Shown piece after piece: positions 1,889-22,200 of a DNA stretch of 28,848 nucleotides. Position 1 is the first letter of the stretch. Each line of letters starts with the position of its first letter. The DNA comes from Macrostomum lignano (lineage: Eukaryota): the NCBI GenBank assembly GCA_002269645.1, contig NIVC01003136.1, forward strand, positions 69,891 through 98,738, written 5' to 3'. Below the pieces are notes generated by a model. It made no database searches. It was given only the letters and a program-made list of their open reading frames with translations, and had not been told where the DNA came from. A program made the position numbers and the translations under genes.

Positions 1889-1907
1889 GATTTTTAAAGG
1901 TTCAGTT

Positions 1908-2093: not shown

Positions 2094-2600
2094 GGGAGAT
2101 GGGTGTGAGAGATGGGTGGGGGGATGGGTGTGGGAGATGGATGTGGGGAGATGAGAGTGGGGAAGATTGGTGTGGAGAGATACGAGGTGTGTGGAGATGG
2201 ATTTGGGGATATGGGTGTGGGGAGATGGATGTGGGGAGATGGGTGTGGGAGATGGGTGTTGGAGATGGGTGTGGGGATATGGGTGTGGGGATATGGGTTT
2301 GGGGATATGGGTGTGGGGAGATGGATTTGGGGATATGGGTGTGGGGAGATGGATGTGAGGAGATGGGTTTGGGGAGATGGGTGTGGGAGATGGGTGTCGG
2401 AAGATGGGTGTGGGAGATGGGTGTGGGAGAAGGGTGTGGGAGATGGGTGTGGGAGATGGGTGTCGGAAGATGGGTGTGGGAGATGGGTGTCGGAAGATGG
2501 GTGTGGGAGATGGGTGTCGGAAGATGGGTGTGGGAGATGGGTGTCGGAAGATGGGTGTGGGAGATGGGTGTCGGAAGATGGGTGTGGGAGATGGGTGTGG
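2094..2600. repeat. G-rich minisatellite GATGGGTGTGGGA (13-14 bp, 27-bp higher-order unit at its 3' end) in the ENaC intron
   Basis: Direct reading of tandem units. Confidence 0.95.
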
Positions 2601-2628
2601 CAGCTGAATTTCTCACCTGACTCCCCAG

Positions 2629-3422
2629 ATCGACCGCAAGCGCGCCGCCCTGCCCAACTGCCTTGACGTGCGGCAGCCGAACTTCCTGGTCAGCAGCGCC
2701 TGCTACCTCGCACTGAAGAAATTCGTGGCGCAGCGGGCGGACACCAGCGGCTGCCGCAGCCAGTGCGAGCAGCGAGCCTACTCCATCCAGGTGACCGGGA
2801 CCAAGTGGCCCCTGCAGAGCAACATCCAGTCCATGGTGAAGATGATGATCAAGTCCAGGCTGGCGGAGCTGGAGGCCGAGTACGGCCGGCCGATGTACGG
2901 CCTGCGCTACATCCAGCAGGTTGACGCGCTGCTGCAGGAGGCCCAGCTGCCAACGCCAGCTCCGGGGCGGCCGCGCTGATGAAGCCCTTCAACCATTCGG
3001 TGTTCGACAGCGTCCAGATGGACATGAACTCCACGCAGCTCAGCCTGCTGAACAAGCTCAGCAGCATCGTCACCTCGAACTTCGTGAAGCTGCAGGTGCG
3101 CGCGGACTCAAACACGGTGCAGTCAATCATCGAGACGCACAAGTACGCTCTGAGCAACGTCATGAGCGAGATCGGAGGTCTGCTCGGCCTGTACCTGGGC
3201 TGGAGCGCCATGACCTTCGTGGAGCTGCTGCATCTGCTGCATCTCATGTGCCGCTTCGTCTCCTACAGGCTGGCCGGCCGCGCCGGCAGGGCGGCTGGCG
3301 GACCGGCGCCCGACCGAGCCGCGGAGGAGGCGCTCGAAGTGCCGAGTGTCTCCGGCTCGCTGAAGCCGGTGCGCGTGCACCCGGCGGGTGGGGACAGCGG
3401 GGAGAGCAGAATGGCCTGGTAG
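2629..3422 (+). CDS. DEG/ENaC (amiloride-sensitive Na+ channel/ASIC-like) terminal coding exon, copy 1, with a 1-bp C-run deletion at ~2942
   Basis: ctccccag|ATC acceptor; CRSQCEQRAY; NFVKLQV; YALSNVMSEIGGLLGLYLGWSAMTFVEL (TM2 signature). Confidence 0.88.
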
Positions 3423-3452
3423 GTGGGAGATCCGGGATCGGAAAGAAATTCG

Positions 3453-4247
3453 GGATCTGACAGTCTGGGAGCGGGATTTGGGATCTGACAGTCTGGGAGC
3501 GGGATTTGGGATCTGAGTCTAGAAGCGGGATTTGTGATCTGACAGCATAGGATCTGGAATTGGAATCTGACAGTCTGGGAGCGGCATCCGGGATCTGAGA
3601 GTCTGGGAGCGGGATCCACGATCTGACAGTCTGGGAGCGGGATCCAGGATCTGACAGTCTGGGAGCGGGATCCAGGATCTGACAGTCTGGGAGCGGGATC
3701 CGGGATCTGAGAGTCTGGGAGCGGGATCCAGGATCTGACAGTCTGGGAGCGGGATCCAGGATCTGACAGTCTGGGAGCGGGATCCAGAATCTGACAGTCT
3801 GGGAGCGGGATCCAGGATCTGACAGTCTGGGAGCGGGATCCGGGATCTGACAGTCTGGGAGCGGGATCCAGGATCTGACAGTCTGGGAGCGGGATCCAGG
3901 ATCTGACAGTCTGGGAGCGGGATCCAGGATCTGACAGTCTGGGAGCGGGATCCAGGATCTGACAGTCTGGGAGCGGGATCCAGGATCTGACAGTCTGGGA
4001 GCGGGATCCAGGATCTGACAGTCTGGGAGCGGGATCCAGGATCTGACAGTCTGGGAGCGGGATCCAGGATCTGACAGTCTGGGAGCGGGATCCGGGATCT
4101 GACAGTCTGGGAGCGGGATCCAGGATCTGATATTCTGGGAGCGGGATCCAGGATCTGACAGTCTGGGAGCGGGATCCAGAATCTGACAGTCTGGGAGCGG
4201 GATCCGGGATCTGAGAGTCTGGGAGCGGGATCCGGGATCTGACAGTC
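3453..4247. repeat. 28-bp minisatellite GGATCTGACAGTCTGGGAGCGGGATCCA, ~28 units, just 3' of the ENaC stop
   Basis: Direct reading; 28-aa periodicity in overlapping ORFs. Confidence 0.95.
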
Positions 4248-4629
4248 GGACAGGATTGCCACCACACTGCACAATACAATTCAAAGAAACAACGCTTACA
4301 AACTCCCAATGCCCAGAATAGAATGTATTATTCAGTTGCAATGCCTGACACTCGCACACGATATTTCCAGATTTACATGTACCACTACTGTAACTACATG
4401 TAGTAGCACAAAAGTATTGCTAAAATCTTGCACCCGTAAAGCACGCACACAAGTTCGCTGGCACACCCTGATACTGCGATGGCTGGAAAGCGATTACTTG
4501 GCAATCGTGACCCTATCGACTCAATAAGATTAATAATAATTTTCTGCACTGAAGATCCTGCATTAAGCAGAGTATTTTTTGACTTCTAAATTTCGATCTC
4601 TGTGGACTCATGCACAGTCAGCAGCAATA

Positions 4630-4635
4630 TTTATT
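4630..4635 (-). terminator. Candidate Smad4 copy 1 polyadenylation signal AATAAA
   Basis: TTTATT on + strand ~680 nt past the stop. Confidence 0.35.
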
Positions 4636-4992
4636 TTTAGATAGAACAGGACACAGACGGTTAAATATAGCATTTTATGCATAAATAATATGTACTAATT
4701 ATATTTACTAATATACGAGTCAGCAAACTACACCAACAGGCGGAAAAAAATTGCACACAGAGAATCTCCTGAGAACGGCTAAGAAATCAGAAAAAATTTG
4801 TCGATAAAAGCGGCATAGATGGCAGTTGACTGACTACAGGCAGGCTGTACAAGTTGTGTGTTGCTCAAAATTGCTAACACATATGACAAGCAACTACTGA
4901 GTGAGTAGTACAGCTGGCGTTTATATACACAAAAACAGCTGTACAATAAGGAGAGAATGACGACGTAATACTCGCTTGATGCAAGCTTCAGC

Positions 4993-5308
4993 CCTGACAA
5001 TGTGAGAGTCAGCTGACCCACCAGCCTGACAATGCCAGAATCAGCTGACCCACCAGCCTGACAATGCGAGAGTCAGCTGACCCACCAGCCTGACAATGCG
5101 AGAGTCAGCTGACCCACCAGCCTGACAATGCGAGAGTCAGCTGACCCACCAGCCTGACAATGCGAGAGTCAGCTGACCCACCTGCCTGACATTGTGAGAG
5201 TCAGCTGACCCACCAGCCTGACAATGCGAGAGTCAGCTGACCAACCAGCCTGACAATGCGAGAGTCAGCTGACCCACCTGCCTGACAATGCGAGAGTCAG
5301 CTGACCCA
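4993..5308. repeat. 32-bp minisatellite GAGAGTCAGCTGACCCACCAGCCTGACAATGC, ~10 units, abutting the Smad4 stop
   Basis: Direct reading. Confidence 0.95.
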
Positions 5309-5629
5309 TCAGGAGTCGCTGACGGGCAGACTCTGCAGCAGGTCATCCAGCAGCTTGAGCGGCAGGTGCAGCTGCACTTCAATCCAGCAGGGCGCCTCCC
5401 GGATAGTCTTGCGCGGGTAGTCGGGCCCCCAGCCCTTCACGAAGCTCAGACGCAGCTGGCACAGCCGCCGGCGAAGCTCGTCAACAGCGGCGCCCTGACG
5501 ACGCGGCCCGGCCGGCAGCGAAGTGAAGGACGAAGAGGTGCTGGATGCCGCGGCGGTGGCCAGGGAGGCGCGGTGGGCCTGGAGAGCCTGGGTGCGCATC
5601 TCCGAGTAGCACTGGCGGATGTCGAAAAC
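5309..5629 (-). CDS. SMAD4: SMAD4 copy 1 last exon (MH2 C-half)
   Basis: cccgtcag|GTTTTCGAC; VFDIRQC...CWIEVQLHLPLKLLDDLL...SDS*. Confidence 0.92.
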   Translation of the reverse strand, partial: VFDIRQCYSEMRTQALQAHRASLATAAASSTSSSFTSLPAGPRRQGAAVDELRRRLCQLRLSFVKGWGPDYPRKTIREAPCWIEVQLHLPLKLLDDLLQSLPVSDS

Positions 5630-5695
5630 CTGACGGGGTGTCGGGACCACAGGTGGGCGCGCGTAAACTGCGCGTTCGAGCATCAACTGGCTGGA

Positions 5696-6735
5696 ACCAC
5701 ACAGTACACATGCACCAATACCACACAGTACACATGCACTAAAACCACACAGTACACATGCACCAAAACCACACAGTACACATGCACCAAAACCACACAG
5801 TACATATGCACCAAAACCACACAGTACACATGCATCAAAACCACACAGTACACATGCACCAAAACCACACAGTACACATGCACTAAAACCACACAGTACT
5901 CATGCACTAAAACCACACAGTACTCATGCACCAAAACCACACAGTACACATGCACCAAAACCACACAGTACACATGCACCAAAACCACACAGTACACATG
6001 CACCAAAACCACACAGTACACATGCACTAAAACCACACAGTACACATGCACCAAAACCACACAGTACACATGCACTAAAACCACACAGTACTCATGCACT
6101 AAAACCACACAGTACTCATGCACCAAAACCACACAGTACACATTCACTCATACCATACAGTACACATGCACCAATACCACACAGTACACATGCACTAAAA
6201 CCACACAGTACTCATGCACTAAAACCACACAGTACTCATGCACCAAAACCACACAGTACACATTCACTCATACCATACAGTACACATGCACCAATACCAC
6301 ACAGTACACATGCACTAAAGCCACAGAGTACACATGTGTAGTGAGTTGCAAGTGTACTTGTATGCGCCAGTCGCTACAGCGGGGTGGGGGTTGCTATTGT
6401 ACAGCATGTACGTGATTTCCACCCACCCCTGTCTCTATCTTTTATACCCAGTTATGTAACAATCGTTGTATCGTATTTAATCTGCGTATCGATCTAATAA
6501 ACGCTAAGAGGCTTCGTCAACTCTCAGTCGTATCTCTCTGCCTTAGTCTACACATGCACTAAAACCACATAGTACACATGCACTAAAACCACACAGTACA
6601 CATGCACTAAAACCACACAGTACACATGCACTAAAACCACACAGTACACATGCACTGAAACCACACAGTACACATGCACTAAAACCACACAGTACACATG
6701 CACTAAAACCACACAGTACACATGCACTAAAAAAA
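5696..6735. repeat. 24-bp minisatellite ACCACACAGTACACATGCACYAAA, split by a solo LTR (blocks 5696-6336 and 6553-6735)
   Basis: TTQYTCTK peptide periodicity. Confidence 0.95.
6337..6552 (+). mobile_element. Solo LTR, 216 bp, in the last Smad4 intron
   Basis: TGTAG...CTACA inverted termini; 4-bp CATG target-site duplication (6333-6336 and 6553-6556); AATAAA at 6496. Confidence 0.8.
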
Positions 6736-6780
6736 CCATGCGCTTCAGTTCGCAACTTTTATTGGTCAACCAGCGCCAAC

Positions 6781-7085
6781 CTTGATGTAAGTCCCAGGAT
6801 AAATCTTGTGCACCAGATCGCCAGACGCTCACCCGGCCTCCCGGTCCAGGAAGGCGGTGCTGACGAACACGGCATGGTCGGAGAGAACCCGCAGCCAGAC
6901 GTCTCCGTCGCCAACCAGGCTCAGTTGGACGCCTTTGCCGATGTGCAGCCGGGCGCGCTCGCCACGTCGCTGCGGTGCACGTTGCTGAGCTGGCCGAGGC
7001 AGAACCGGTGGCTGGAGGACGGGTCCGTGTAGCCGTCAATGGTGACCGTGACCTGCTGGTAGGGCGCCTTGAAGGTGTCGCCGAT
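6781..7085 (-). CDS. SMAD4: SMAD4 copy 1 MH2 exon containing the in-frame TGA
   Basis: ccttcag|ATCGGCGAC ... TACATCAAG|gttggc; IGDTFK...[22 protein letters not shown]. Confidence 0.9.
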
Positions 7086-7149
7086 CTGAAGGGCGTGATT
7101 CGCCGACAATTTGAGAACGTTCGATGAAATCTCCGTGCTATGTAAAGAT

Positions 7150-7610
7150 GGGGATTTCCCATGGGGTGTGTGTACACAGGGGGAGGGGATTTCCCATGGG
7201 GTGTGTGTACACAGGGGGAGGGGATTTCCCATGGGGTGTGTGTACACAGGGGAGGGGATTTCCCATGGGGTCTGTGTACACTGGGGAGGGGATTTCCCAT
7301 GGGGTGTGTGTACACAGGGGGAGGGGATTTCCCATGGGGTGTGTGTACACTGGGGGAGGGGATTTCCCATGGGGTGTGTGTACACAGGGGGAGGGGATTT
7401 CCCATGGGGTGTGTGTACACTGGGGGAGGGGATTTCCCATGGGGTGTGTGTACACAGGGGGATGGGGATTTCCCATGGGGTGTGTGAACACAAGTGGGAG
7501 GGGATTTCCCATGGGGTGTGTGTACACAAGGGGGAGCTGGAGGGATTTCCCATGGGGTGTGTACACAAGAGGGAGGGATTTCCCATGGGGTGTATACACA
7601 AGAGGGAGGG
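7150..7610. repeat. 35-bp minisatellite GGGATTTCCCATGGGGTGTGTGTACACAGGGGGAG, ~13 units
   Basis: Direct reading. Confidence 0.95.
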
Positions 7611-7679
7611 TAGTTCCGAAATGTTGAGGGCTTTCTACTTTCAGATCTATTTCCAATTTAAAGTAAACAATGGTCATAC

Positions 7680-8066
7680 CCGCTCCGTCTGCTCATAGTA
7701 GGAGATGCTGCACCAGAACAGCAGCTGCTGCTGCGGTATCGGCGGCAGCGCCGTCTGCTTCGGCACCGCGGCTGCCCCGGCCGACTGTTGCTGCGGCATC
7801 AGCAGCGGCGGCAGCGGCGGCGAAATTCCCTCGATGCCGCCGTGATCGTCCGTGGGCCCGGAGTCCTCGTCCAGGCTGAGCGACGACAGCTCCAGGCCGG
7901 TGCAGGCGATGCGCTCGTAGTGGTGCGGGTTCACGCAGACCGCGTCCTGCTTCAGGTCGAAGGCGAACTGGCACTGGCGGGTGTGCCGCAGCTCGTTCTT
8001 GTGCAGGTCCGGCCAGCGCCAGATGCGCGCGTACACCACGTGGGGAAAGCCTTTGCGGCCAGCCAC
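7680..8066 (-). CDS. SMAD4: SMAD4 copy 1 exon: MH1 C-half, linker, MH2 start
   Basis: cccccag|GTGGCTGGC ... GAGCGG|gtatga; 387 nt, phase 0/0. Confidence 0.92.
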
Positions 8067-8097
8067 CTGGGGGGAGAGGGGTGGCGATTGAGGGATG

Positions 8098-8123
8098 GAC
8101 AGACAGTCGGACAGACAGACAGT

Positions 8124-8165
<42 letters not shown>

Positions 8166-8168
8166 GGC

Positions 8169-8204
<36 letters not shown>
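8098..8204. repeat. (GACA)n microsatellite filling most of a 138-bp Smad4 intron
   Basis: Direct reading. Confidence 0.97.
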
Positions 8205-8524
8205 CTGCAGCCGGCCGTCTAGAGTCCTGGGATGGTGACGCAGATGCCGGGCTGGGCGCCGTTGCTGGTCACCGCCAGGATCAGCGCGTCCAGCTCGTCG
8301 CGCTTGTCCTTGAGCTTTTTCACCAGCGACTCGACCGCCTTCCGGCTGAAGCTCTCGGAATCCGGGCCGCCCTGCCGGTGGCACATCAGCGAGTGCACGA
8401 TGGACAGGCAGGCATCCGATGACGTCACCGGCGACGCGACGCCAACGGCGGAGAATGGAGAGGTCGCGGCGCTGGCAGCTGGGGCCAGGGACAGCAGCGG
8501 CTGCTGCTGCTGCTGACTGGGAAT
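8205..8524 (-). CDS. SMAD4: SMAD4 copy 1 exon: MH1 N-half (5' boundary inferred)
   Basis: ccttctcctcaactgcag|ATT acceptor; CTGCAG|gtctgt donor. Confidence 0.8.
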
Positions 8525-8611
8525 CTGCAGTTGAGGAGAAGGCGGGCATTTCGGCTGCCTATAGAGGTCTGAAGGATGTCTTTCGAACCATTTGTATGAG
8601 CTTACAGAGCC

Positions 8612-9077
8612 GAGGAGCTGGGAAGGCAGTGGCCCAGCAACTGAGGATTTGGAAGGGTGGCCCAGCAACTGAGGATCTGGGAGAGCAGTGGCCCAGCAAC
8701 TGAGGATCAGGGAGAGTAGGGCCCAGCAACTGAGGATCAGGGAGAGTAGTGGTCCAGCAACTGAGGATCAGGGAGAGTAGTGGCCCAGCACCTGAGGAGC
8801 TGGAAGAGTAGTGGCCCAGCACCTGACGAGCTGGGAGAGTAGTGGCCCAGCAACTGAGGATCAGGAAGAGTAGTGGCCCAGCACCTGAGGATCAGGGAGA
8901 GTAGTGACCCAGCAACTGAGGATCAGGGAGAGCAGTGGCCCAGCAACTGAGGATCTGGGAAAGCAGTGGCCCAGCAACTGAGGATTCGGAGAGTGGCCCA
9001 GCAACTGAGGATCAGAGAGAGTAGTAGTGGCCCAGCAACTGAGGAGCTGGGAGAGTGGTGGCCCAGCCTGAGGATCT
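8612..9077. repeat. ~31-bp minisatellite GTGGCCCAGCAACTGAGGATCAGGGAGAGTA, ~15 units
   Basis: Direct reading. Confidence 0.95.
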
Positions 9078-9490
9078 GCAGGCCTTAGCAGAAAATGGAC
9101 CCCAAAATTGTTTAGAAATCAGAAAGTCCGAGCGGGATAAAATCAAACACGAGAAAAGCGCATTTATTTTTGTTTTAGCCAGCTTGACGCATTGAGGGGA
9201 GACAATTAAGACGGTGCATTTAACAGAATGCTAAGCTAACTAAAAACTTACAGAAATGTCAGCGGTTCAGCAGTGCAAGTGCACTTGGAATTTTAATTGT
9301 AGGGCACAGTGGCGGAGAGTGCTATTGAATATTGTGAGTATAGTGAAGCAGAAGGACCAGTTAGCATTTCAGCATTGAATAATCTTTCAAATATAAGCAC
9401 ACTGCTTTCGAAGAAACTCATTTGATGTGACTGCGCTTAAAAACTTTTTTAAAGCCCCATTTGTCATGTACATTGCGATGAGGTTTTTTT

Positions 9491-9726
9491 TGGGCCGTAT
9501 GTACACTAGGGGGTAGGGGTTTTGTTAGGCCGTGTGTACACTAGGGGGTAGGCGTTTTGTTGGGCCGTGTGTACACTAGGGGGTAGGGGTTTTGTTGAGC
9601 CATATGTACACTAGGGGGTAGGGGTTTTGTTAGGCCGTGTGTACACTAGGGGTAGGCGTTTTGTTGGGCCGTGTGTACACTAGGGGGTAGGCGTTTTGTT
9701 GGGCCGTATGTAATAGGGGGTAGGGT
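9491..9726. repeat. 35-bp minisatellite GGCCGTGTGTACACTAGGGGGTAGGGGTTTTGTTA, ~6.5 units
   Basis: Direct reading. Confidence 0.93.
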
Positions 9727-10107
9727 TCATGATAATTAAGGCGTTTCTCTCTGCCACTAAGGCTGCTGTGGAATTTTTAATTTAAGTTTCATCACGGAAA
9801 GGCATCAAAGCTACATTTAGTGAAGGAAAGTACGTCATGCATTTATAATAGTGCATACAAGTTGAATTGCAGACAGTACAAAAGAGGGAGAGGTGCAGCA
9901 CAGCTAAACGGGGGTTACGCCGACTGCAAGCTGAAAAAAGAGGGTAATAAAAAATTAACAAACTTAATAAATAAAAAAACAGTTTAGAGAACAAAAGGCA
10001 CGGATCAGGGTTTAACTAGCAGGGCATGTGATTTATTATGTAGTCACAAACTCGAGAACCGCAAAGGAATGCTCGAATACATAAAAAAGACATTGAAAAA
10101 AACTGAC

Positions 10108-10155
10108 TGGCCCTGTCACAGGTGGCCGAGCAGGTGACAGACACTCCAGGGCCAT
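10108..10155 (-). CDS. Candidate Smad4 copy 1 first coding exon (MALECLSPARPPVTGP)
   Basis: GC-rich island in AT-rich DNA; ATG plus 16 codons, then a phase-0 GTCAGT donor compatible with the phase-0 acceptor at 8524; no homology support. Confidence 0.3.
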
Positions 10156-10280
10156 CGGACGGAGTAAAATTTACAATTTTTTAATTACAAAAACGAGGTG
10201 CAACAATGTGCACTGGATAAATTTGCTCCATCAAAATAGGGAGCAGTGATGATTAGTAAATATGGATACGAGGCGATTAA

Positions 10281-10329
10281 GTATATTAGTATATTAGTAT
10301 ATTAGTTTATTAGTATATAAGTATATTAG
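10281..10329. repeat. Duplication junction: six tandem copies of GTATATTA (two variant)
   Basis: The equivalent site at 18094-18101 has one copy. Confidence 0.9.
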
Positions 10330-10438
10330 GAAGATGGGTGTGGGAGATGGGTGTCGGAAGATGGGTGTGGGAGATGGGTGTCGGAAGATGGGTGTGGGAG
10401 ATGGGTGTGGCAGCTGAATTTCTCACCTGACTCCCCAG

Positions 10439-11233
10439 ATCGACCGCAAGCGCGCCGCCCTGCCCAACTGCCTTGACGTGCGGCAGCCGAACTTCCTGGT
10501 CAGCAGCGCCTGCTACCTCGCACTGAAGAAATTCGTGGCGCAGCGGGCGGACACCAGCGGCTGCCGCAGCCAGTGCGAGCAGCGAGCCTACTCCATCCAG
10601 GTGACCGGGACCAAGTGGCCCCTGCAGAGCAACATCCAGTCCATGGTGAAGATGATGATCAAGTCCAGGCTGGCGGAGCTGGAGGCCGAGTACGGCCGGC
10701 CGATGTACGGCCTGCGCTACATCCAGCAGGTTGACGCGCTGCTGCAGGAGGCCCCAGCTGCCAACGCCAGCTCCGGGGCGGCCGCGCTGATGAAGCCCTT
10801 CAACCATTCGGTGTTCGACAGCGTCCAGATGGACATGAACTCCACGCAGCTCAGCCTGCTGAACAAGCTCAGCAGCATCGTCACCTCGAACTTCGTGAAG
10901 CTGCAGGTGCGCGCGGACTCAAACACGGTGCAGTCAATCATCGAGACGCACAAGTACGCTCTGAGCAACGTCATGAGCGAGATCGGAGGTCTGCTCGGCC
11001 TGTACCTGGGCTGGAGCGCCATGACCTTCGTGGAGCTGCTGCATCTGCTGCATCTCATGTGCCGCTTCGTCTCCTACAGGCTGGCCGGCCGCGCCGGCAG
11101 GGCGGCTGGCGGACCGGCGCCCGACCGAGCCGCGGAGGAGGCGCTCGAAGTGCCGAGTGTCTCCGGCTCGCTGAAGCCGGTGCGCGTGCACCCGGCGGGT
11201 GGGGACAGCGGGGAGAGCAGAATGGCCTGGTAG
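10439..11233 (+). CDS. DEG/ENaC terminal coding exon, copy 2 (795 nt, open frame, no upstream exons of its own)
   Basis: Same acceptor as copy 1; SEIGGLLGLYLGWSAMTFVEL. Confidence 0.88.
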   Translation: MDRKRAALPNCLDVRQPNFLVSSACYLALKKFVAQRADTSGCRSQCEQRAYSIQVTGTKWPLQSNIQSMVKMMIKSRLAELEAEYGRPMYGLRYIQQVDALLQEAPAANASSGAAALMKPFNHSVFDSVQMDMNSTQLSLLNKLSSIVTSNFVKLQVRADSNTVQSIIETHKYALSNVMSEIGGLLGLYLGWSAMTFVELLHLLHLMCRFVSYRLAGRAGRAAGGPAPDRAAEEALEVPSVSGSLKPVRVHPAGGDSGESRMAW

Positions 11234-13119
11234 GTGGGAGATCCGGGATCGGAAAGAAATTCGGGATCTGACAGTCTGGGAGCGGGATTTGGGATCTGAC
11301 AGTCTGGGAGCGGGATTTGGGATCTGAGTCTAGAAGCGGGATTTGTGATCTGACAGCATAGGATCTGGAATTGGAATCTGACAGTCTGGGAGCGGCATCC
11401 GGGATCTGAGAGTCTGGGAGCGGGATCCACGATCTGACAGTCTGGGAGCGGGATCCAGGATCTGACAGTCTGGGAGCGGGATCCAGGATCTGACAGTCTG
11501 GGAGCGGGATCCGGGATCTGAGAGTCTGGGAGCGGGATCCAGGATCTGACAGTCTGGGAGCGGGATCCAGGATCTGACAGTCTGGGAGCGGGATCCAGAA
11601 TCTGACAGTCTGGGAGCGGGATCCAGGATCTGACAGTCTGGGAGCGGGATCCGGGATCTGACAGTCTGGGAGCGGGATCCAGGATCTGACAGTCTGGGAG
11701 CGGGATCCAGGATCTGACAGTCTGGGAGCGGGATCCAGGATCTGACAGTCTGGGAGCGGGATCCAGGATCTGACAGTCTGGGAGCGGGATCCAGGATCTG
11801 ACAGTCTGGGAGCGGGATCCAGGATCTGACAGTCTGGGAGCGGGATCCAGGATCTGACAGTCTGGGAGCGGGATCCAGGATCTGACAGTCTGGGAGCGGG
11901 ATCCGGGATCTGACAGTCTGGGAGCGGGATCCAGGATCTGATATTCTGGGAGCGGGATCCAGGATCTGACAGTCTGGGAGCGGGATCCAGAATCTGACAG
12001 TCTGGGAGCGGGATCCGGGATCTGAGAGTCTGGGAGCGGGATCCGGGATCTGACAGTCGGACAGGATTGCCACCACACTGCACAATACAATTCAAAGAAA
12101 CAACGCTTACAAACTCCCAATGCCCAGAATAGAATGTATTATTCAGTTGCAATGCCTGACACTCGCACACGATATTTCCAGATTTACATGTACCACTACT
12201 GTAACTACATGTAGTAGCACAAAAGTATTGCTAAAATCTTGCACCCGTAAAGCACGCACACAAGTTCGCTGGCACACCCTGATACTGCGATGGCTGGAAA
12301 GCGATTACTTGGCAATCGTGACCCTATCGACTCAATAAGATTAATAATAATTTTCTGCACTGAAGATCCTGCATTAAGCAGAGTATTTTTTGACTTCTAA
12401 ATTTCGATCTCTGTGGACTCATGCACAGTCAGCAGCAATATTTATTTTTAGATAGAACAGGACACAGACGGTTAAATATAGCATTTTATGCATAAATAAT
12501 ATGTACTAATTATATTTACTAATATACGAGTCAGCAAACTACACCAACAGGCGGAAAAAAATTGCACACAGAGAATCTCCTGAGAACGGCTAAGAAATCA
12601 GAAAAAATTTGTCGATAAAAGCGGCATAGATGGCAGTTGACTGACTACAGGCAGGCTGTACAAGTTGTGTGTTGCTCAAAATTGCTAACACATATGACAA
12701 GCAACTACTGAGTGAGTAGTACAGCTGGCGTTTATATACACAAAAACAGCTGTACAATAAGGAGAGAATGACGACGTAATACTCGCTTGATGCAAGCTTC
12801 AGCCCTGACAATGTGAGAGTCAGCTGACCCACCAGCCTGACAATGCCAGAATCAGCTGACCCACCAGCCTGACAATGCGAGAGTCAGCTGACCCACCAGC
12901 CTGACAATGCGAGAGTCAGCTGACCCACCAGCCTGACAATGCGAGAGTCAGCTGACCCACCAGCCTGACAATGCGAGAGTCAGCTGACCCACCTGCCTGA
13001 CATTGTGAGAGTCAGCTGACCCACCAGCCTGACAATGCGAGAGTCAGCTGACCAACCAGCCTGACAATGCGAGAGTCAGCTGACCCACCTGCCTGACAAT
13101 GCGAGAGTCAGCTGACCCA

Positions 13120-15937
13120 TCAGGAGTCGCTGACGGGCAGACTCTGCAGCAGGTCATCCAGCAGCTTGAGCGGCAGGTGCAGCTGCACTTCAATCCAGCA
13201 GGGCGCCTCCCGGATAGTCTTGCGCGGGTAGTCGGGCCCCCAGCCCTTCACGAAGCTCAGACGCAGCTGGCACAGCCGCCGGCGAAGCTCGTCAACAGCG
13301 GCGCCCTGACGACGCGGCCCGGCCGGCAGCGAAGTGAAGGACGAAGAGGTGCTGGATGCCGCGGCGGTGGCCAGGGAGGCGCGGTGGGCCTGGAGAGCCT
13401 GGGTGCGCATCTCCGAGTAGCACTGGCGGATGTCGAAAACCTGACGGGGTGTCGGGACCACAGGTGGGCGCGCGTAAACTGCGCGTTCGAGCATCAACTG
13501 GCTGGAACCACACAGTACACATGCACCAATACCACACAGTACACATGCACTAAAACCACACAGTACACATGCACCAAAACCACACAGTACACATGCACCA
13601 AAACCACACAGTACATATGCACCAAAACCACACAGTACACATGCATCAAAACCACACAGTACACATGCACCAAAACCACACAGTACACATGCACTAAAAC
13701 CACACAGTACTCATGCACTAAAACCACACAGTACTCATGCACCAAAACCACACAGTACACATGCACCAAAACCACACAGTACACATGCACCAAAACCACA
13801 CAGTACACATGCACCAAAACCACACAGTACACATGCACTAAAACCACACAGTACACATGCACCAAAACCACACAGTACACATGCACTAAAACCACACAGT
13901 ACTCATGCACTAAAACCACACAGTACTCATGCACCAAAACCACACAGTACACATTCACTCATACCATACAGTACACATGCACCAATACCACACAGTACAC
14001 ATGCACTAAAACCACACAGTACTCATGCACTAAAACCACACAGTACTCATGCACCAAAACCACACAGTACACATTCACTCATACCATACAGTACACATGC
14101 ACCAATACCACACAGTACACATGCACTAAAGCCACAGAGTACACATGTGTAGTGAGTTGCAAGTGTACTTGTATGCGCCAGTCGCTACAGCGGGGTGGGG
14201 GTTGCTATTGTACAGCATGTACGTGATTTCCACCCACCCCTGTCTCTATCTTTTATACCCAGTTATGTAACAATCGTTGTATCGTATTTAATCTGCGTAT
14301 CGATCTAATAAACGCTAAGAGGCTTCGTCAACTCTCAGTCGTATCTCTCTGCCTTAGTCTACACATGCACTAAAACCACATAGTACACATGCACTAAAAC
14401 CACACAGTACACATGCACTAAAACCACACAGTACACATGCACTAAAACCACACAGTACACATGCACTGAAACCACACAGTACACATGCACTAAAACCACA
14501 CAGTACACATGCACTAAAACCACACAGTACACATGCACTAAAAAAACCATGCGCTTCAGTTCGCAACTTTTATTGGTCAACCAGCGCCAACCTTGATGTA
14601 AGTCCCAGGATAAATCTTGTGCACCAGATCGCCAGACGCTCACCCGGCCTCCCGGTCCAGGAAGGCGGTGCTGACGAACACGGCATGGTCGGAGAGAACC
14701 CGCAGCCAGACGTCTCCGTCGCCAACCAGGCTCAGTTGGACGCCTTTGCCGATGTGCAGCCGGGCGCGCTCGGCCACGTCGCTGCGGTGCACGTTGCTGA
14801 GCTGGCCGAGGCAGAACCGGTGGCTGGAGGACGGGTCCGTGTAGCCGTCAATGGTGACCGTGACCTGCTGGTAGGGCGCCTTGAAGGTGTCGCCGATCTG
14901 AAGGGCGTGATTCGCCGACAATTTGAGAACGTTCGATGAAATCTCCGTGCTATGTAAAGATGGGGATTTCCCATGGGGTGTGTGTACACAGGGGGAGGGG
15001 ATTTCCCATGGGGTGTGTGTACACAGGGGGAGGGGATTTCCCATGGGGTGTGTGTACACAGGGGGAGGGGATTTCCCATGGGGTCTGTGTACACTGGGGG
15101 AGGGGATTTCCCATGGGGTGTGTGTACACAGGGGGAGGGGATTTCCCATGGGGTGTGTGTACACTGGGGGAGGGGATTTCCCATGGGGTGTGTGTACACA
15201 GGGGGAGGGGATTTCCCATGGGGTGTGTGTACACTGGGGGAGGGGATTTCCCATGGGGTGTGTGTACACAGGGGGATGGGGATTTCCCATGGGGTGTGTG
15301 AACACAAGTGGGAGGGGATTTCCCATGGGGTGTGTGTACACAAGGGGGAGCTGGAGGGATTTCCCATGGGGTGTGTACACAAGAGGGAGGGATTTCCCAT
15401 GGGGTGTATACACAAGAGGGAGGGTAGTTCCGAAATGTTGAGGGCTTTCTACTTTCAGATCTATTTCCAATTTAAAGTAAACAATGGTCATACCCGCTCC
15501 GTCTGCTCATAGTAGGAGATGCTGCACCAGAACAGCAGCTGCTGCTGCGGTATCGGCGGCAGCGCCGTCTGCTTCGGCACCGCGGCTGCCCCGGCCGACT
15601 GTTGCTGCGGCATCAGCAGCGGCGGCAGCGGCGGCGAAATTCCCTCGATGCCGCCGTGATCGTCCGTGGGCCCGGAGTCCTCGTCCAGGCTGAGCGACGA
15701 CAGCTCCAGGCCGGTGCAGGCGATGCGCTCGTAGTGGTGCGGGTTCACGCAGACCGCGTCCTGCTTCAGGTCGAAGGCGAACTGGCACTGGCGGGTGTGC
15801 CGCAGCTCGTTCTTGTGCAGGTCCGGCCAGCGCCAGATGCGCGCGTACACCACGTGGGGAAAGCCTTTGCGGCCAGCCACCTGGGGGGAGAGGGGTGGCG
15901 ATTGAGGGATGGACAGACAGTCGGACAGACAGACAGT

Positions 15938-15979
<42 letters not shown>

Positions 15980-15982
15980 GGC

Positions 15983-16018
<36 letters not shown>

Positions 16019-16339
16019 CTGCAGCCGGCCGTCTAGAGTCCTGGGGATGGTGACGCAGATGCCGGGCTGGGCGCCGTTGCTGGTCACCGCCAGGATCAGC
16101 GCGTCCAGCTCGTCGCGCTTGTCCTTGAGCTTTTTCACCAGCGACTCGACCGCCTTCCGGCTGAAGCTCTCGGAATCCGGGCCGCCCTGCCGGTGGCACA
16201 TCAGCGAGTGCACGATGGACAGGCAGGCATCCGATGACGTCACCGGCGACGCGACGCCAACGGCGGAGAATGGAGAGGTCGCGGCGCTGGCAGCTGGGGC
16301 CAGGGACAGCAGCGGCTGCTGCTGCTGCTGACTGGGAAT
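13120..16339 (-). pseudogene. SMAD4: SMAD4 copy 2; exons 16339-16019, 15880-15494, 14897-14592, 13440-13120; frame intact except the in-frame TGA at 14642-14640
   Basis: MH1 and MH2 align to human SMAD4; exon lengths 321/387/306/321, all phase 0; introns at GRLQ|VAG and YIK|VFD match human positions as I recall them. Confidence 0.88.
14148..14363 (+). mobile_element. Solo LTR, duplicated copy
   Basis: TGTAG...CTACA with CATG target-site duplication. Confidence 0.8.
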
Positions 16340-17920
16340 CTGCAGTTGAGGAGAAGGCGGGCATTTCGGCTGCCTATAGAGGTCTGAAGGATGTCTTTCG
16401 AACCATTTGTATGAGCTTACAGAGCCGAGGAGCTGGGAAGGCAGTGGCCCAGCAACTGAGGATTTGGAAGGGTGGCCCAGCAACTGAGGATCTGGGAGAG
16501 CAGTGGCCCAGCAACTGAGGATCAGGGAGAGTAGGGCCCAGCAACTGAGGATCAGGGAGAGTAGTGGTCCAGCAACTGAGGATCAGGGAGAGTAGTGGCC
16601 CAGCACCTGAGGAGCTGGAAGAGTAGTGGCCCAGCACCTGACGAGCTGGGAGAGTAGTGGCCCAGCAACTGAGGATCAGGAAGAGTAGTGGCCCAGCACC
16701 TGAGGATCAGGGAGAGTAGTGACCCAGCAACTGAGGATCAGGGAGAGCAGTGGCCCAGCAACTGAGGATCTGGGAAAGCAGTGGCCCAGCAACTGAGGAT
16801 TCGGAGAGTGGCCCAGCAACTGAGGATCAGAGAGAGTAGTAGTGGCCCAGCAACTGAGGAGCTGGGAGAGTGGTGGCCCAGCCTGAGGATCTGCAGGCCT
16901 TAGCAGAAAATGGACCCCAAAATTGTTTAGAAATCAGAAAGTCCGAGCGGGATAAAATCAAACACGAGAAAAGCGCATTTATTTTTGTTTTAGCCAGCTT
17001 GACGCATTGAGGGGAGACAATTAAGACGGTGCATTTAACAGAATGCTAAGCTAACTAAAAACTTACAGAAATGTCAGCGGTTCAGCAGTGCAAGTGCACT
17101 TGGAATTTTAATTGTAGGGCACAGTGGCGGAGAGTGCTATTGAATATTGTGAGTATAGTGAAGCAGAAGGACCAGTTAGCATTTCAGCATTGAATAATCT
17201 TTCAAATATAAGCACACTGCTTTCGAAGAAACTCATTTGATGTGACTGCGCTTAAAAACTTTTTTAAAGCCCCATTTGTCATGTACATTGCGATGAGGTT
17301 TTTTTTGGGCCGTATGTACACTAGGGGGTAGGGGTTTTGTTAGGCCGTGTGTACACTAGGGGGTAGGCGTTTTGTTGGGCCGTGTGTACACTAGGGGGTA
17401 GGGGTTTTGTTGAGCCATATGTACACTAGGGGGTAGGGGTTTTGTTAGGCCGTGTGTACACTAGGGGTAGGCGTTTTGTTGGGCCGTGTGTACACTAGGG
17501 GTAGGCGTTTTGTTGGGCCGTATGTAATAGGGGGTAGGGTTCATGATAATTAAGGCGTTTCTCTCTGCCACTAAGGCTGCTGTGGAATTTTTAATTTAAG
17601 TTTCATCACGGAAAGGCATCAAAGCTACATTTAGTGAAGGAAAGTACGTCATGCATTTATAATAGTGCATACAAGTTGAATTGCAGACAGTACAAAAGAG
17701 GGAGAGGTGCAGCACAGCTAAACGGGGTTACGCCGACTGCAAGCTGAAAAAAGAGGGTAATAAAAAATTAACAAACTTAATAAATAAAAAAACAGTTTAG
17801 AGAACAAAAGGCACGGATCAGGGTTTAACTAGCAGGGCATGTGATTTATTATGTAGTCACAAACTCGAGAACCGCAAAGGAATGCTCGAATACATAAAAA
17901 AGACATTGAAAAAAACTGAC

Positions 17921-17968
17921 TGGCCCTGTCACAGGTGGCCGAGCAGGTGACAGACACTCCAGGGCCAT
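17921..17968 (-). CDS. Candidate Smad4 copy 2 first coding exon
   Basis: Same as 10108-10155. Confidence 0.3.
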
Positions 17969-18461
17969 CGGACGGAGTAAAATTTACAATTTTTTAATTA
18001 CAAAAACGAGGTGCAACAATGTGCACTGGATAAATTTGCTCCATCAAAATAGGGAGCAGTGATGATTAGTAAATATGGATACGAGGCGATTAAGTATATT
18101 AGTTCAACGGCCTGCGCATCTAGGTGCTACGCTGATATGCAGCGGCAGTCGCAACACACTGCTGCTAGTAGAAAAAGACCAGTGCGAGCCAGTAGTGAGA
18201 AAAACGGATAGCAAAAAAACACAAAAGACAGCAAAGGCTGTAGAAGCAAACTAAGCAATCAATAACTAAATGAACTGAAGAGCGAAATAGTTTGCCAAAT
18301 TAGTACGGGTGGACAAAGTCAGTCACGGGAGCTGGCACAGCACTAGGTAATTAGCGGTTAAAATAGAAAAGACTATATTAAATATCTAAACACCGCGTCA
18401 GCCAATCAGAATAGAGACTCAGCAATAAACCAATCAAAATCATTTCAAACCTGCCGATTCA

Positions 18462-18876: not shown

Positions 18877-19208
18877 TCAGGACTCAGTCTCCTCAGCCGT
18901 GGCGTCCTTCAGCGTGACCGTGACGAAGCCGTTGTTGCTCTTGCCATCAGCCGAGGACACCTCGTACTGGTCGGCGTCGGCCGCGGCCGAGCCAACTAGG
19001 CCAGCCCCGTTCTCGGCCCGACCAGCGTCTCCAGCATCTCGGAGCGCAAGTCGGCAGCTGGTGGCGACTCTCCGCCATCGCCGCTGCCGCTGCCGCCGTC
19101 GCCAGTCTCAGCCTCGACTGCCTGAGCAGCCTGGACCTGAGGCCGCTTCTCGCTAGGCCGCTGCGCGTCCTTCTCCTCGGCGTCGATTACCGCGGCCACC
19201 GCGGTGAG
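18877..19208 (-). CDS. PCM1: PCM1 last exon; needs +1 nt at ~19018 to read to TGA at 18879-18877 (otherwise stops at 18996)
   Basis: ccgccag|CTCACC acceptor; the acidic frame ENGAGLVG...TAEETES* continues after a short G run. Confidence 0.6.
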
Positions 19209-22200
19209 CTGGCGGCGAATCGGAGAGTTTAGGACACTTATTTGATGCCAACACCCGCCAATGCCTACTTGTAGTAGTAATTGACAGTCAAAGTTCTTAG
19301 CGGGATAATTTTTCCAGCAAGTTACTAATATCGCGGAGCAAGAGATTTTAAGTGCATTGTGATGCATCCCAGGCCAGTCTTTGTCCTCTATCCCAGCCCA
19401 GTCTTTGTCCTCCTCACCCCTTCCGTATCCTCTCCACCACCGTCGCTGTCGTCACCGGCCGCGGCCACGGAGCCGCCCTCGACCTCCTCCTCTTCGGAGC
19501 CGATCAGTGTCATCTCGCGTGTCTCGCTGGCCGCCAGCTGTACCGCCACGCCGACGTTGCCGCCTTCAGCCTCCTCGTCCTGCTGATCCTCAGCCTCCTC
19601 TTCATCAACTTCCTCCTCTTCATCATAGTCTTCCTCTTCCTCCTCCTCCTCCTCCTCGTCATCGCCAGTTTCCTCCGCTTCGTAGTCGACGCCGCTGCCA
19701 TCGACACCCTGCCGGTTGGCCTCATCCAGACTGGCGATCAGGCGGTGGAAGGCCAGTTCGTTGAACAGGGTCTCGCTGAGGTCCACCAGCAGGTCCTCCA
19801 GGCAGTCCGTGAGACGGCGGCCCTGGTATCTGAAAGGCAAAGGGGAACCGATGGGTTTTGGGTCTGGACCAATCAGAGAACAGCAGGCTATTCTGGACCA
19901 ATCAGAGAACAGCAGGCTATTCTGGACCAATCAGAGAACTGCAGGCTATTCTGGACCAATCAGAGAACAGCTGGCTATTCTGGACAAATCGGAGAACTGC
20001 AGGCTATTCTAGACCAATCAGAGAACTGCAGGCTATTCTAGACCAATCAGAGAACTGCAGGATATTCTAGACAAATCAGAGAATAGCAGGCTATTCTGGA
20101 CCAATCAGGGAAATCAGACAGACTCACTTGGCCAGCGCGTCGGTCACCAGGCTGGTAAGCTGCCGAGAGAACAGCCGCTCAAACTCGTCGTCGGAGTCAG
20201 CCGACCGCGCCATCGTGGCCGCGGCCGCTGACTGCTGGGCTGCCATGATGAGGCGAACCCGGCGCAGTGCCAGGTCGCGCAGCCAGGTGAGGAACTGCGG
20301 AGTGGCGGTCTCGTGCGCGTGCGCCTTAACCAGCGGGATGAGGTGGTGCACCACCGCTTTGATCTGCGCGTCAAGGCGGCGACTGTCGAGCAGCGGCTGG
20401 CGTGGCGGCACCGGCGGAGGTGGCGGCTGCTGCTGGCGCCGCTCACGCAGGATTTGCATGGCTCTGCGGGAGATTTGATTCAGACATAGGCTGGCAGTGT
20501 TAAACATAGGATCTAGTCGATAGCAATTCCGACTCCTGCACCAAAGTCCCGGGTTCGATTTTGCGGCCCGGCCACGTGAACTTGGGTTTCTCGAACATGA
20601 GGGTCAGCCCCATAGGCAGCGTGCACAGGTCTTTCAAAATCCAAATCGCTCACCGGCTGAACTCTAAATCCAAAATCTCTTGATCTGTGAAACTCCTAAA
20701 TCACGCACCCCACTTTCCAAACTCCCTAATGAAGTCCCAGATCCCTCACCAGCAAAACTCCCTAATGAAGTCCCAGATCCCTCACCTGCAAAACTCCCTA
20801 ATGAGATCCCAGATCCGTCACCTGCAAAATTCACTAATGAAACCCCAGATCCCTCACTTGCAAAACTCCCTAATGAAATCCCAGATCCCTCACCTGCAAA
20901 ACTCCCTAATGAGATCCCAGATCCCTCACCTGCAAAACTCCCTAATGAAATCCCAGATCCCTCACCTGCAAAACTCCCTAATGAGATCCCAGATCCCTCA
21001 CCTGCAAAACTCCCTAATGAAATCCCAGATCCCTCACCTGCAAAACTCCCTAATGAGATCCCAGATCCCTCACCTGCAAAACTCCCTAATGAAATCCCAG
21101 ATCCCTCACCTGCAAAACTCCCTAATGAGATCCCAGATCCCTCACCTGCAAAACTCCCTAATGAAATCCCAGATCCCTCACCTGCAAAACTTTCTAATGA
21201 GATCCCGAATCCCTCACTCTCACCTGCAAAACTCCGTAACGAAATCCCGAAACTCTCGTCTTCTAAACTCCTAATTCTAAATCCCTCACCTGTCCAGGTG
21301 CACTACGGTGTCGCCCAGGGAGTCCCTGGCAAACAGGGTGCCACCGCTGGCCGCGGCCGCAGCGCTAGGCGTGGTGGACACGGAGCTGCTGGCATCGTAG
21401 TAGGCCACGGGCTCTGCGTAGTCGGCCGCGCCGCCGCCAGCCAGCCGCCGCGCCAGGGCGCGGGCCGCCGCTCGCCTCACCGCGTCTTCGTCGCCAACAC
21501 CCGCCGCAGTGTTGGAAGTCGCCGTGGTGGTGGCGTAACTCTCCGAGGGCGTCTGTTCGAAGCCGGCGCCGCCTGCCGCAGCGGAAGCGCCGGTGTCGCG
21601 AAGCCACGGCGGCTGGCGACGGCTGCCACCGGCTGCGCTGCCGACCGAGCTCACCTGCCTGCCGTGGGGTAAAGGGAACGTAGTGACTAGATCTGGTTGC
21701 TATGCTCTTGACACTACGCACCTCTGAATCGGCTGCTATGGTCTAAGTTGGTTGCTATGGTCTGAGTTGGTTGCTATGGTTTGAGTTGGTTGCCATGGTC
21801 TGAGTTGGTTGCTATGGTTTGAGTTAGTTGCTATATATTCTGAGTTATTTGATTCAGAGTTAGTTGCTATGCATCCTGAGTTAGTTGCTATGCATCCTGG
21901 GTTAGTTGCTATGCATCCTGAGTTAGTTGCTATGCATCCTGGGTTAGTTGCTATGCACTCTGAGTTAGTTGCTATGCATCCTGGGTTAGTTGCTATGCAC
22001 TCTGAGTTAGTTGCTATGCATCCTGAGTTAGTTGCTATGCATTCTGAGTTTCTACGCATCCTGAGTTATTTGCTATGCATTCTGAGTTAGTTGCTATGCA
22101 TTCTGAGTTAGTTGCTATGCATCCTGGGTTAGTTGCTATGCATCCTGGGTTAGTTGCTATGCACTCTGAGTTAGTTGCTATGCATCCTGAGTTAGTTGCT

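What the first reader, a model, noticed from the sequence alone, without database searches (positions are those of the whole stretch)
14592..14660. Both Smad4 copies carry an in-frame TGA at the conserved MH2 Arg (human R420)
Seen: the exon reads [26 protein letters not shown] in both copies (14642-14640; 6831-6829), and the residues after the stop still match human [21 protein letters not shown]. Everything else in copy 2 is intact, so the lesion is recent and fits a CGA>TGA CpG transition. It is a substitution shared by both copies, unlike the indel noise elsewhere. Known: losing the last ~123 aa removes the L3 loop and C-terminal helices needed for R-Smad heterotrimers. The stop lies only 48 nt upstream of the last exon junction, under the vertebrate 50-55-nt NMD threshold. 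Inference: this is either a fresh pseudogene or null allele that was then duplicated, or an expressed MH1-plus-half-MH2 Smad4 that could act as a dominant-negative TGF-beta/BMP modulator; readthrough or A-to-I editing (UGA to UGG) is also possible.
Basis: partly seen in the sequence, partly recalled or inferred. Interest (0 to 1): 0.8.

Follow-up and report, generated by a model that had tools for sequence, protein, structure and literature searches.

The report
Stop-disabled spare Smad4 copy, flatworm
One of three near-identical Smad4-like gene copies in the recently polyploid flatworm Macrostomum lignano carries a premature stop at a universally conserved arginine and was then duplicated in tandem; this looks like ordinary early decay of a redundant gene copy.

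Summary
On the minus strand an in-frame TGA (14642-14640, and 6831-6829 in the other copy) replaces the Arg that equals human SMAD4 R420. It lies 48 nt before the last exon junction, and the rest of copy 2 is open.

The window is Macrostomum lignano, a flatworm, not a vertebrate. The two "copies" are a 7.8-kb tandem duplication with 0 substitutions and only 7 one-base homopolymer length differences. They are therefore not independent witnesses of the stop.

Three collinear paralogous loci in assembly GCA_002269645.1 are single-copy and carry CGG (Arg) at this codon. Two base changes are therefore needed, not one CGA>TGA step. Published work describes three homeologous subgenomes in this species, with about 1.1% CDS divergence. 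The window copy is the outlier of the three (1.5-1.6%).

Best reading: a young nonsense-disabled homeolog that was later duplicated, tolerated because intact copies remain.

No SECIS element or unusual RNA structure was found. TGA also ends this same gene. The change creates a GTGAG splice-donor motif, but splicing from it to exon 4 would be out of frame.

Reads and RNA-seq could not be checked, so a consensus error, expression, or dominant-negative activity remain untested. Interest is low.

The parts
14640..14642 (-). In-frame TGA in exon 3 of Smad4-like copy 2, at the column of human SMAD4 R420. The paralogous loci have CGG here.
6829..6831 (-). The same TGA in copy 1 of the tandem duplication
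16019..16339 (-). Copy 2 exon 1 (321 nt, N-terminus plus first part of MH1). It starts directly after a CTGCAG acceptor (16345-16340) and has no in-frame ATG. The start codon is probably donated by the spliced leader, which ends in ATG.
   Evidence: SL sequence and acceptor motif from PMC8629364; database models start at IPSQQQ
15494..15880 (-). Copy 2 exon 2 (387 nt: rest of MH1, short linker, start of MH2)
14592..14897 (-). Copy 2 exon 3 (306 nt, MH2 core). It contains the TGA as codon 86 of 102.
13120..13440 (-). Copy 2 exon 4 (last exon: L3 loop region and C-terminal helices, open and conserved). The normal stop TGA is at 13122-13120.
14639..14643 (-). GTGAG, the consensus M. lignano 5' splice-site motif, created by the two substitutions (paralogs read GCGGG). 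Splicing from here to exon 4 would be out of frame.
   Evidence: donor motif GT[G/A]AG from PMC8629364; UniProt model A0A1I8GHM2 ends its exon here
5309..8524 (-). Copy 1 of the Smad4-like gene. Exons are 8524-8205, 8066-7680, 7085-6781 and 5629-5309. Besides the TGA it has one-base deletions in exon 1 (near 8228) and exon 3 (near 6960), both in homopolymer runs.
2519..10290 (.). Tandem duplication unit 1. It contains the C-terminal exon of an ASC/DEG-ENaC channel gene (+ strand) and Smad4-like copy 1 (- strand).
10329..18103 (.). Tandem duplication unit 2. It is identical to unit 1 apart from 7 one-base homopolymer length differences.
10291..10328 (.). Duplication junction: about five imperfect copies of TATATTAG, joined to the last ~80 nt of the GGGAGATGGGTGTG minisatellite. 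This filler is absent from the single-copy paralogous locus L001.

Best explanation
The window comes from the neopolyploid flatworm Macrostomum lignano. It holds one of three homeologous copies of a short-linker Smad4-like (co-Smad) gene.

In this copy the conserved Arg codon (CGG in the other two homeologs) has become TGA through two base changes. Translation would end after MH1, the linker and the first half of MH2, which removes the L3 loop and C-terminal helices. A 7.8-kb segment carrying the already disabled gene was then duplicated in tandem very recently.

Because the intact homeologs and a second, long-linker Smad4 gene remain, the loss is tolerated. I read the locus as a young, unprocessed pseudogene or null allele: ordinary gene fractionation after whole-genome duplication.

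Shown here: the stop, its position, the identity of the copies, the intact paralogs, and the absence of the duplication at the paralogous locus.

Inferred: that the TGA is present in the animal's DNA rather than only in the consensus, that the product is non-functional, and the order of events.
For: - Organism and gene: the best hits are M. lignano Smad proteins at 99% identity. MH1 and MH2 are found by Pfam, and SMAD4 is the best PDB match at 293 bits against 157 for SMAD3.
- Intact paralogs: loci L001, L002 and L003 (GCA_002269645.1) have CGG at the codon. Their annotated proteins read REAGRASGD.
- Three-copy structure: the window CDS differs from L002 at 20 of 1320 nt and from L003 at 21. 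L002 and L003 differ from each other at 11, so the window copy is the outlier. This fits the published S/L1/L2 subgenomes, with CDS SNP rate 1.1% and L-S divergence greater than L1-L2 (PMC10733133).
- Synteny: L001 is collinear with the window across the PCM1-like gene (98.5% identity), the Smad4-like gene, the ASC exon and the retroelement (97.4%). It carries one unit, not two.
- Order of events: there are 0 substitutions between the units and both have the TGA. The junction has its own TATATTAG filler, as expected of a real rearrangement.
- Recent origin: pN/pS between the window copy and L002 is 0.16 overall. Exon 4, downstream of the stop, is still open and conserved.
- Hint of relaxed constraint: the branch separating the window copy from the other two has 7 synonymous and 6 non-synonymous codon changes. 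The two other branches together have 10 and 1 (Fisher p=0.08).
- A second assembly of the same locus appears to have the stop in both units. UniProt A0A1I8GHM2 (739 aa) carries the window-specific residues, spans both units and skips the stop codon in each, yet lacks the window's copy-1 frameshifts.
Against: - No reads or RNA-seq could be examined. The assembly clearly has consensus errors (7 homopolymer indels between the units, and a 1-nt deletion in exon 3 of L001), so an error at this codon is not excluded.
- The two assemblies that show the stop were, according to PMC5730564, built from the same PacBio data.
- The excess of non-synonymous changes is not significant. It cannot be assigned to the window lineage without an outgroup.
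- Everything except the stop is intact in copy 2, so an expressed truncated product is possible.
Confidence: 0.7

Rival explanations
1. The TGA is a consensus or polishing error of a long-read assembly in a multi-copy region. The real locus encodes Arg and the gene is intact.
For: - The window shows assembly-type noise: 7 one-base homopolymer differences between otherwise identical units.
- L001 has a 1-nt deletion that produced a frameshifted annotated protein.
- PMC10733133 reports that 93% of read pairs map to multiple loci, which makes polishing unreliable.
Against: - All visible errors are homopolymer indels, with 0 substitutions in 7.8 kb. The TGA differs from the paralogs by two substitutions, neither in a homopolymer.
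- The TGA is identical in both units, and the gene model from another assembly version also avoids a stop at this point in both units.
Confidence: 0.12
2. The truncated MH1 plus half-MH2 protein is made and acts as a modulator, for example a dominant-negative co-Smad. The tandem duplication raises its dose.
For: - Copy 2 is otherwise intact, with conserved splice sites and a trans-splice acceptor.
- The stop is near the 3' end of the penultimate exon.
- From memory, C-terminally truncated SMAD4 constructs have been used as dominant negatives.
Against: - There is no expression evidence.
- The cut falls in the middle of the MH2 fold (Pfam positions 2-97 of 174 retained), so the domain is unlikely to fold.
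- The duplicated unit also includes an unrelated ASC exon and intergenic DNA, so it does not look gene-targeted.
- Exon 4 shows no sign of having been free to decay for long, so there has been little time for selection on a new role.
Confidence: 0.07
3. The two substitutions created a functional GTGAG 5' splice site, so the locus produces a new splice isoform rather than stopping at the TGA.
For: - GCGGG became GTGAG, which matches the most enriched M. lignano donor motif GT[G/A]AG.
- An automatic gene model (A0A1I8GHM2) uses this site.
Against: - The donor leaves the exon in phase 2, while exon 4 starts in phase 0. The product would be frameshifted, with about 60 aa of unrelated tail, and would still lack a functional MH2 C-terminus (sequence reasoning; the same tail is seen in P0002).
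- The database model is a predictor's work-around that fuses the two units.
Confidence: 0.05
4. The UGA is recoded (selenocysteine, programmed readthrough, or A-to-I editing to UGG) and a full-length protein is made.
For: Only the intact downstream reading frame.
Against: - No SECIS element or any Rfam family was found at gathering threshold in the window. None was found at E<=1 in the 3' region either, apart from a chance snoRNA hit at E=0.41.
- Homologs have Arg, not Cys, at this column.
- The gene's own terminator is TGA.
- The base after the stop is G. From general knowledge, a purine there favours termination.
- The local RNA fold is no more stable than shuffled sequence, z=-0.54.
- The intact downstream frame is equally explained by the stop being young.
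Confidence: 0.02

Closest known systems
Homeolog loss (fractionation) after whole-genome duplication: unprocessed pseudogenes with a single disabling mutation
   Same: - One of three collinear homeologs carries a premature stop while the others stay intact.
- Divergence of 1.5% in the CDS matches the published subgenome divergence of M. lignano.
- Introns are retained.
   Different: - The disabled copy was then duplicated in tandem.
- Pseudogene status rests on one stop codon only. Transcription was not tested.
Human SMAD4 MH2 truncating and R420 mutations (cancer, juvenile polyposis)
   Same: - The same column as human R420.
- The same consequence: loss of the L3 loop and C-terminal helices needed for heteromeric Smad complexes.
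   Different: - Here it is a germline state in a flatworm with redundant intact copies. It is not a somatic or haploinsufficient lesion.
- No phenotype is implied.
M. lignano Smad4-like gene models already in databases (UniProt A0A1I8GHM2, A0A1I8GYA9, A0A1I8GG00; NCBI PAA86243.1, PAA74554.1, PAA69714.1)
   Same: - It is the same gene family.
- A0A1I8GHM2 carries the window-specific residues and spans both tandem units.
   Different: - A0A1I8GHM2 hides the stop by splicing around it and fusing the two units into one 739-aa protein.
- The other models come from the intact paralogous loci.

Membership tests
Smad4 / co-Smad | N-terminal MH1 domain | tested here: met
   Pfam PF03165, E=6.8e-39, model positions 2-102 of 103
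Smad4 / co-Smad | C-terminal MH2 domain | tested here: met
   The genomic reading frame matches the whole SMAD4 MH2 (1YGS residues 4-229 of 234, E=1.4e-86). The product ending at the TGA keeps only Pfam MH2 positions 2-97 of 174.
Smad4 / co-Smad | Closer to Smad4 than to receptor-regulated or inhibitory Smads, including the Smad4-specific insert in MH2 | tested here: met
   - SMAD4 chains score 293 bits, against 157 for SMAD2/3, 137 for SMAD1 and 94 for SMAD7.
- Only SMAD4 aligns over the full 220 residues.
- Every named hit in the top 120 of the database search except one (P0111, which NCBI names a coiled-coil protein) is a Smad4/Medea-type or generically named Smad; several hits carry no informative name.
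Smad4 / co-Smad | No C-terminal SSXS phosphorylation motif | tested here: met
   The reading frame ends ...LQSLPVSDS*.
Unprocessed (duplicated) pseudogene | Disabling mutation in an otherwise recognisable gene that keeps its introns | tested here: met
   TGA at codon 86 of exon 3. There are four exons with canonical AG/GT boundaries.
Unprocessed (duplicated) pseudogene | An intact functional paralog exists | tested here: met
   L002 and L003 encode full-length proteins with Arg (CGG). L001 also has CGG.
Unprocessed (duplicated) pseudogene | Relaxed selective constraint | tested here: inconclusive
   7 synonymous and 6 non-synonymous codon changes on the window-vs-others branch, against 10 and 1 on the other branches. 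Fisher p=0.08, and the branch is not polarised.
Unprocessed (duplicated) pseudogene | No functional product (no stable RNA or protein) | not testable with these tools
   No RNA-seq or read data were reachable. The search for fragments from public run assemblies found none from this species.
Selenoprotein gene (UGA = Sec) | SECIS element in the 3' UTR, and UGA aligned with Cys/Sec in homologs | tested here: not met
   No SECIS was found at gathering threshold or at E<=1. The column is Arg in 25 of 25 homologs.
Variant nuclear genetic code with UGA as sense | UGA not used as a terminator | tested here: not met
   This gene and its paralogs end at TGA exactly where Smad4 proteins end.

The most novel reading that the evidence does not exclude
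The stop-truncated MH1 plus half-MH2 co-Smad is stably expressed from both tandem units. In this reading its mRNA is SL trans-spliced and is not degraded. It would act as a dominant-negative or DNA-occupying modulator of BMP/activin signalling in M. lignano. That would be an early case of a homeolog taking on a new role through truncation rather than simply being lost.
Probability: 0.05. Interest if true: 0.55.

Novelty: new member of a known kind. Interest (0 to 1): 0.15.

Why it matters
Mostly as annotation hygiene.
- The locus is represented in UniProt by a 739-aa fusion model (A0A1I8GHM2) that splices around the stop and joins two tandem units. That model should not be used as a Smad4 protein.
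- For people working on M. lignano (knock-outs, BMP or regeneration studies), it helps to know that this Smad4-like gene exists as three homeologs, one of which looks dead and locally duplicated.
- As biology it is one small data point on early gene loss in a neopolyploid animal.
- It does not open a new question unless the truncated product turns out to be expressed and active.

Tried and rejected
- Independent sequence evidence for the codon. A protein search with the MH2 region returned no M. lignano fragments from run assemblies; the best hit was 68% identical and from other animals.
- Finding the window's own contig through its neighbour. A search with the 567-aa PCM1-like ORF failed: low-complexity words filled the candidate list and nothing scored.
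- Literature. Searches for the gene identifiers Mlig001167, Mlig032210 and Mlig031006 found nothing. The Macrostomum + Smad4 search listed four papers, whose titles and abstracts did not mention this locus; I did not read them.
- Selenocysteine or other structured RNA: rejected.
- Editing-type double-stranded structure around the codon: no support, z=-0.54.
- The ATG at 16364 as start codon: rejected, because it is out of frame with MH1.
- A micro-intron from the new GTGAG donor to an AG inside exon 3: rejected. It would be only 28 nt long and out of frame.
- Vertebrate origin (I first thought of lamprey, from the GC content and minisatellites): rejected.
- Pure assembler artefact for the duplication: judged less likely. 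The junction has its own TATATTAG filler, and a gene model from a different assembly version also spans two units. It is not excluded.

Full report
**1. What is in the sequence**

On the minus strand, 14662-14592 reads [26 protein letters not shown] and is followed by a GT donor. The same text occurs 7811 nt away, at 6831-6829.

tblastn with human SMAD4 (sequence from memory) aligns the stop with R420. A phmmer search of PDB confirms this. The MH2 region aligns end to end with 1YGS, which is 234 residues long, the length of human SMAD4 319-552 (range from memory; the tblastn numbering agrees). The stop column falls on chain residue 102, which is residue 420. In an alignment with 25 other Smad4 proteins from flatworms, molluscs, annelids, arthropods, echinoderms, cnidarians and vertebrates, the column is Arg in every one.

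**2. Gene model**

Copy 2 has four coding exons with canonical boundaries:

| Exon | Coordinates (minus strand) |
|---|---|
| 1 | 16339-16019 |
| 2 | 15880-15494 |
| 3 | 14897-14592 |
| 4 | 13440-13120 |

- Pfam finds a complete MH1. In the product that ends at the stop, it finds MH2 positions 2-97 of 174.
- The linker is short, about 50 aa.
- The stop is codon 86 of 102 in exon 3, 48 nt before the last junction. It removes 123 residues, including the L3 loop region and the C-terminal helices.
- Exon 1 has no in-frame ATG, and the ATG at 16364 is out of frame. Exon 1 begins right after CTGCAG, which matches the M. lignano trans-splice acceptor motif [T/C]TNCAG. The 35-nt spliced leader of this species ends in ATG (PMC8629364). 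The database models of this gene start at IPSQQQ, exactly at that acceptor. I infer that the initiator Met is donated by the spliced leader.

**3. The two copies are not independent**

Window 2519-10290 and 10329-18103 align over 7777 columns with 0 substitutions. The 7 gaps are each one base in a G or C run. Even the minisatellite arrays that fill the introns have identical lengths.

- Two of the one-base deletions hit exons 1 and 3 of copy 1.
- The junction (10291-10328) consists of about five imperfect TATATTAG units, joined to the last ~80 nt of the GGGAGATGGGTGTG minisatellite. The single-copy paralogous locus shows only one TATATTAG followed by the unique flank.
- I read this as a real, very recent tandem duplication whose copies differ only by consensus errors. 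An assembly artefact is less likely but not excluded.
- In either case the stop arose before the copies separated.

**4. Origin and paralogs**

The spliced protein is 99% identical to Macrostomum lignano Smad proteins.

Three loci from assembly GCA_002269645.1 were fetched: L001 (NIVC01001298.1), L002 (NIVC01000290.1) and L003 (NIVC01000939.1).

- Their exons are 97.4-99% identical to the window. All three have CGG where the window has TGA, so two changes are needed: C>T at codon position 1 and G>A at position 3.
- L002 and L003 encode full-length proteins. L001 has a 1-nt deletion in exon 3, which explains its frameshifted annotated protein PAA69714.1.
- L001 is collinear with the window: 98.5% identity over the PCM1-like gene upstream, and 97.4% over 6.3 kb downstream, including an ASC-channel exon and a retroelement fragment. 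It contains one unit, not two.

Pairwise differences over 1320 aligned CDS positions:

| Comparison | Differences |
|---|---|
| Window vs L002 | 20 |
| Window vs L003 | 21 |
| L002 vs L003 | 11 |

The window copy is therefore the outlier. This matches the published picture of M. lignano DV1: three homeologous subgenomes (S, L1, L2), a 1.1% SNP rate in CDS, and L-S divergence larger than L1-L2 (PMC10733133). I could not assign the window to a named subgenome.

**5. Age and constraint**

- Window vs L002 gives pS=0.040, pN=0.0065 and pN/pS=0.16. The gene was therefore under purifying selection for most of the time since the copies split, and the stop must be recent.
- By parsimony, the branch between the window copy and the other two carries 7 synonymous and 6 non-synonymous codon changes (the stop included). 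The L002 and L003 branches together carry 10 and 1. The contrast is suggestive only (Fisher p=0.08), and the branch cannot be polarised without an outgroup.

**6. Alternatives tested**

- Recoding: no Rfam family, SECIS included, reaches threshold in the window. None appears at E<=1 in 10400-14700 apart from a chance snoRNA hit. The gene's own terminator is TGA. The 200 nt around the codon fold no better than shuffles, z=-0.54.
- New splice donor: the two substitutions turn GCGGG into GTGAG (14643-14639), the most enriched donor motif in this species. UniProt A0A1I8GHM2 (739 aa) ends its exon there. It fuses copy 2 to copy 1, then shifts frame in copy 1 to pass the second stop. It is clearly a predictor's work-around. 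Splicing from this donor to exon 4 would be out of frame.
- A second assembly: the same model contains copy-1 stretches (…[11 protein letters not shown]…, …SDVAERARL…) that the window's copy 1 cannot encode because of its frameshifts. It must therefore come from another assembly version of the locus. That version also has two units and a stop in each. According to PMC5730564, the ML2 and Mlig_3_7 assemblies share the same PacBio data, so this is only partly independent support.

**7. What could not be done**

No reads or RNA-seq were reachable. The search for fragments from public run assemblies found nothing from this species. The attempt to locate the window's own contig through the neighbouring gene failed. 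Whether the TGA is in the animal's DNA, and whether the locus is transcribed, therefore remain inferences.

**8.

The 48-nt distance is correct. The 50-55-nt rule, however, is a vertebrate exon-junction-complex rule. From general knowledge, NMD in Drosophila, C. elegans and yeast does not depend on a downstream junction, and nothing is established for Macrostomum. Escape from decay cannot be assumed.

**9. Verdict**

This is a real and correctly described stop codon, but an ordinary one. It is a young nonsense mutation in one of three redundant homeologs of a Smad4-like gene in a neopolyploid flatworm, followed by a local tandem duplication. The most useful practical outcome is a warning about the fused UniProt model.

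Noticed in passing
window 16340-16345 (acceptor) and 16339 (first exon base), minus strand; same in copy 1 at about 8525-8530: Exon 1 has no in-frame ATG and starts right after a CTGCAG trans-splice-type acceptor. The M. lignano spliced leader ends in ATG, so the initiator Met is probably supplied by the leader, in frame with IPSQQQ.
   Followed up: partly
window 14639-14643, minus strand: The two substitutions that make the stop also turn GCGGG into GTGAG, the consensus 5' splice-site motif of this species. An automatic UniProt model (A0A1I8GHM2, 739 aa) uses it and fuses the two tandem gene copies.
   Followed up: partly
window 10291-10328: The duplication junction is made of about five imperfect TATATTAG units that are absent from the single-copy paralogous locus. 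This looks like slippage or a templated insertion at a real breakpoint.
   Followed up: partly
window 10478-11233 (+) and 2668-3422 (+): This is the C-terminal exon of an amiloride-sensitive (DEG/ENaC, Pfam ASC) channel gene, convergent with the Smad4-like gene and included in the duplicated unit. Copy 1 has a one-base homopolymer deletion near 2941 that breaks the frame.
   Followed up: partly
window 1-1900, minus strand: A retroelement fragment with gag zinc knuckle, aspartic protease and the start of reverse transcriptase. It is also present at the collinear position in paralogous locus L001, so the insertion predates the split of the homeologs.
   Followed up: partly
window about 18900-26800, minus strand: A PCM1-like gene (Pfam PCM1_C hits in several exons) lies upstream of the Smad4-like gene in the same orientation. 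The same neighbour is seen in L001-L003. Whether the two genes form an operon resolved by trans-splicing was not examined.
   Followed up: no
window 15881-16018, 14962-15407, 13506-14147 and 14360-14543, plus the same positions in copy 1: The introns consist largely of tandem repeats: a (GACA)n run in intron 1, a 35-mer array in intron 2 and two 24-mer arrays in intron 3. A 32-mer array starts at the stop codon of the last exon (12804-13123). Most of the difference between the homeologous loci lies in these arrays.
   Followed up: no
L001 11881-12185 (exon 3 of the paralog on NIVC01001298.1): A one-base deletion in a G run gives the frameshifted annotated protein PAA69714.1. L002 has identical exons without the deletion, so this is probably an assembly error rather than a second disabled copy.
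   Followed up: partly
window codon at 13311-13309 (minus strand; exon 4 positions 130-132): This is a second codon with two adjacent differences from both paralogs (CGT against CTC, Arg/Leu), in the variable Smad4-specific insert. Together with the stop codon, 2 of the 13 changed codons are double changes.
   Followed up: no
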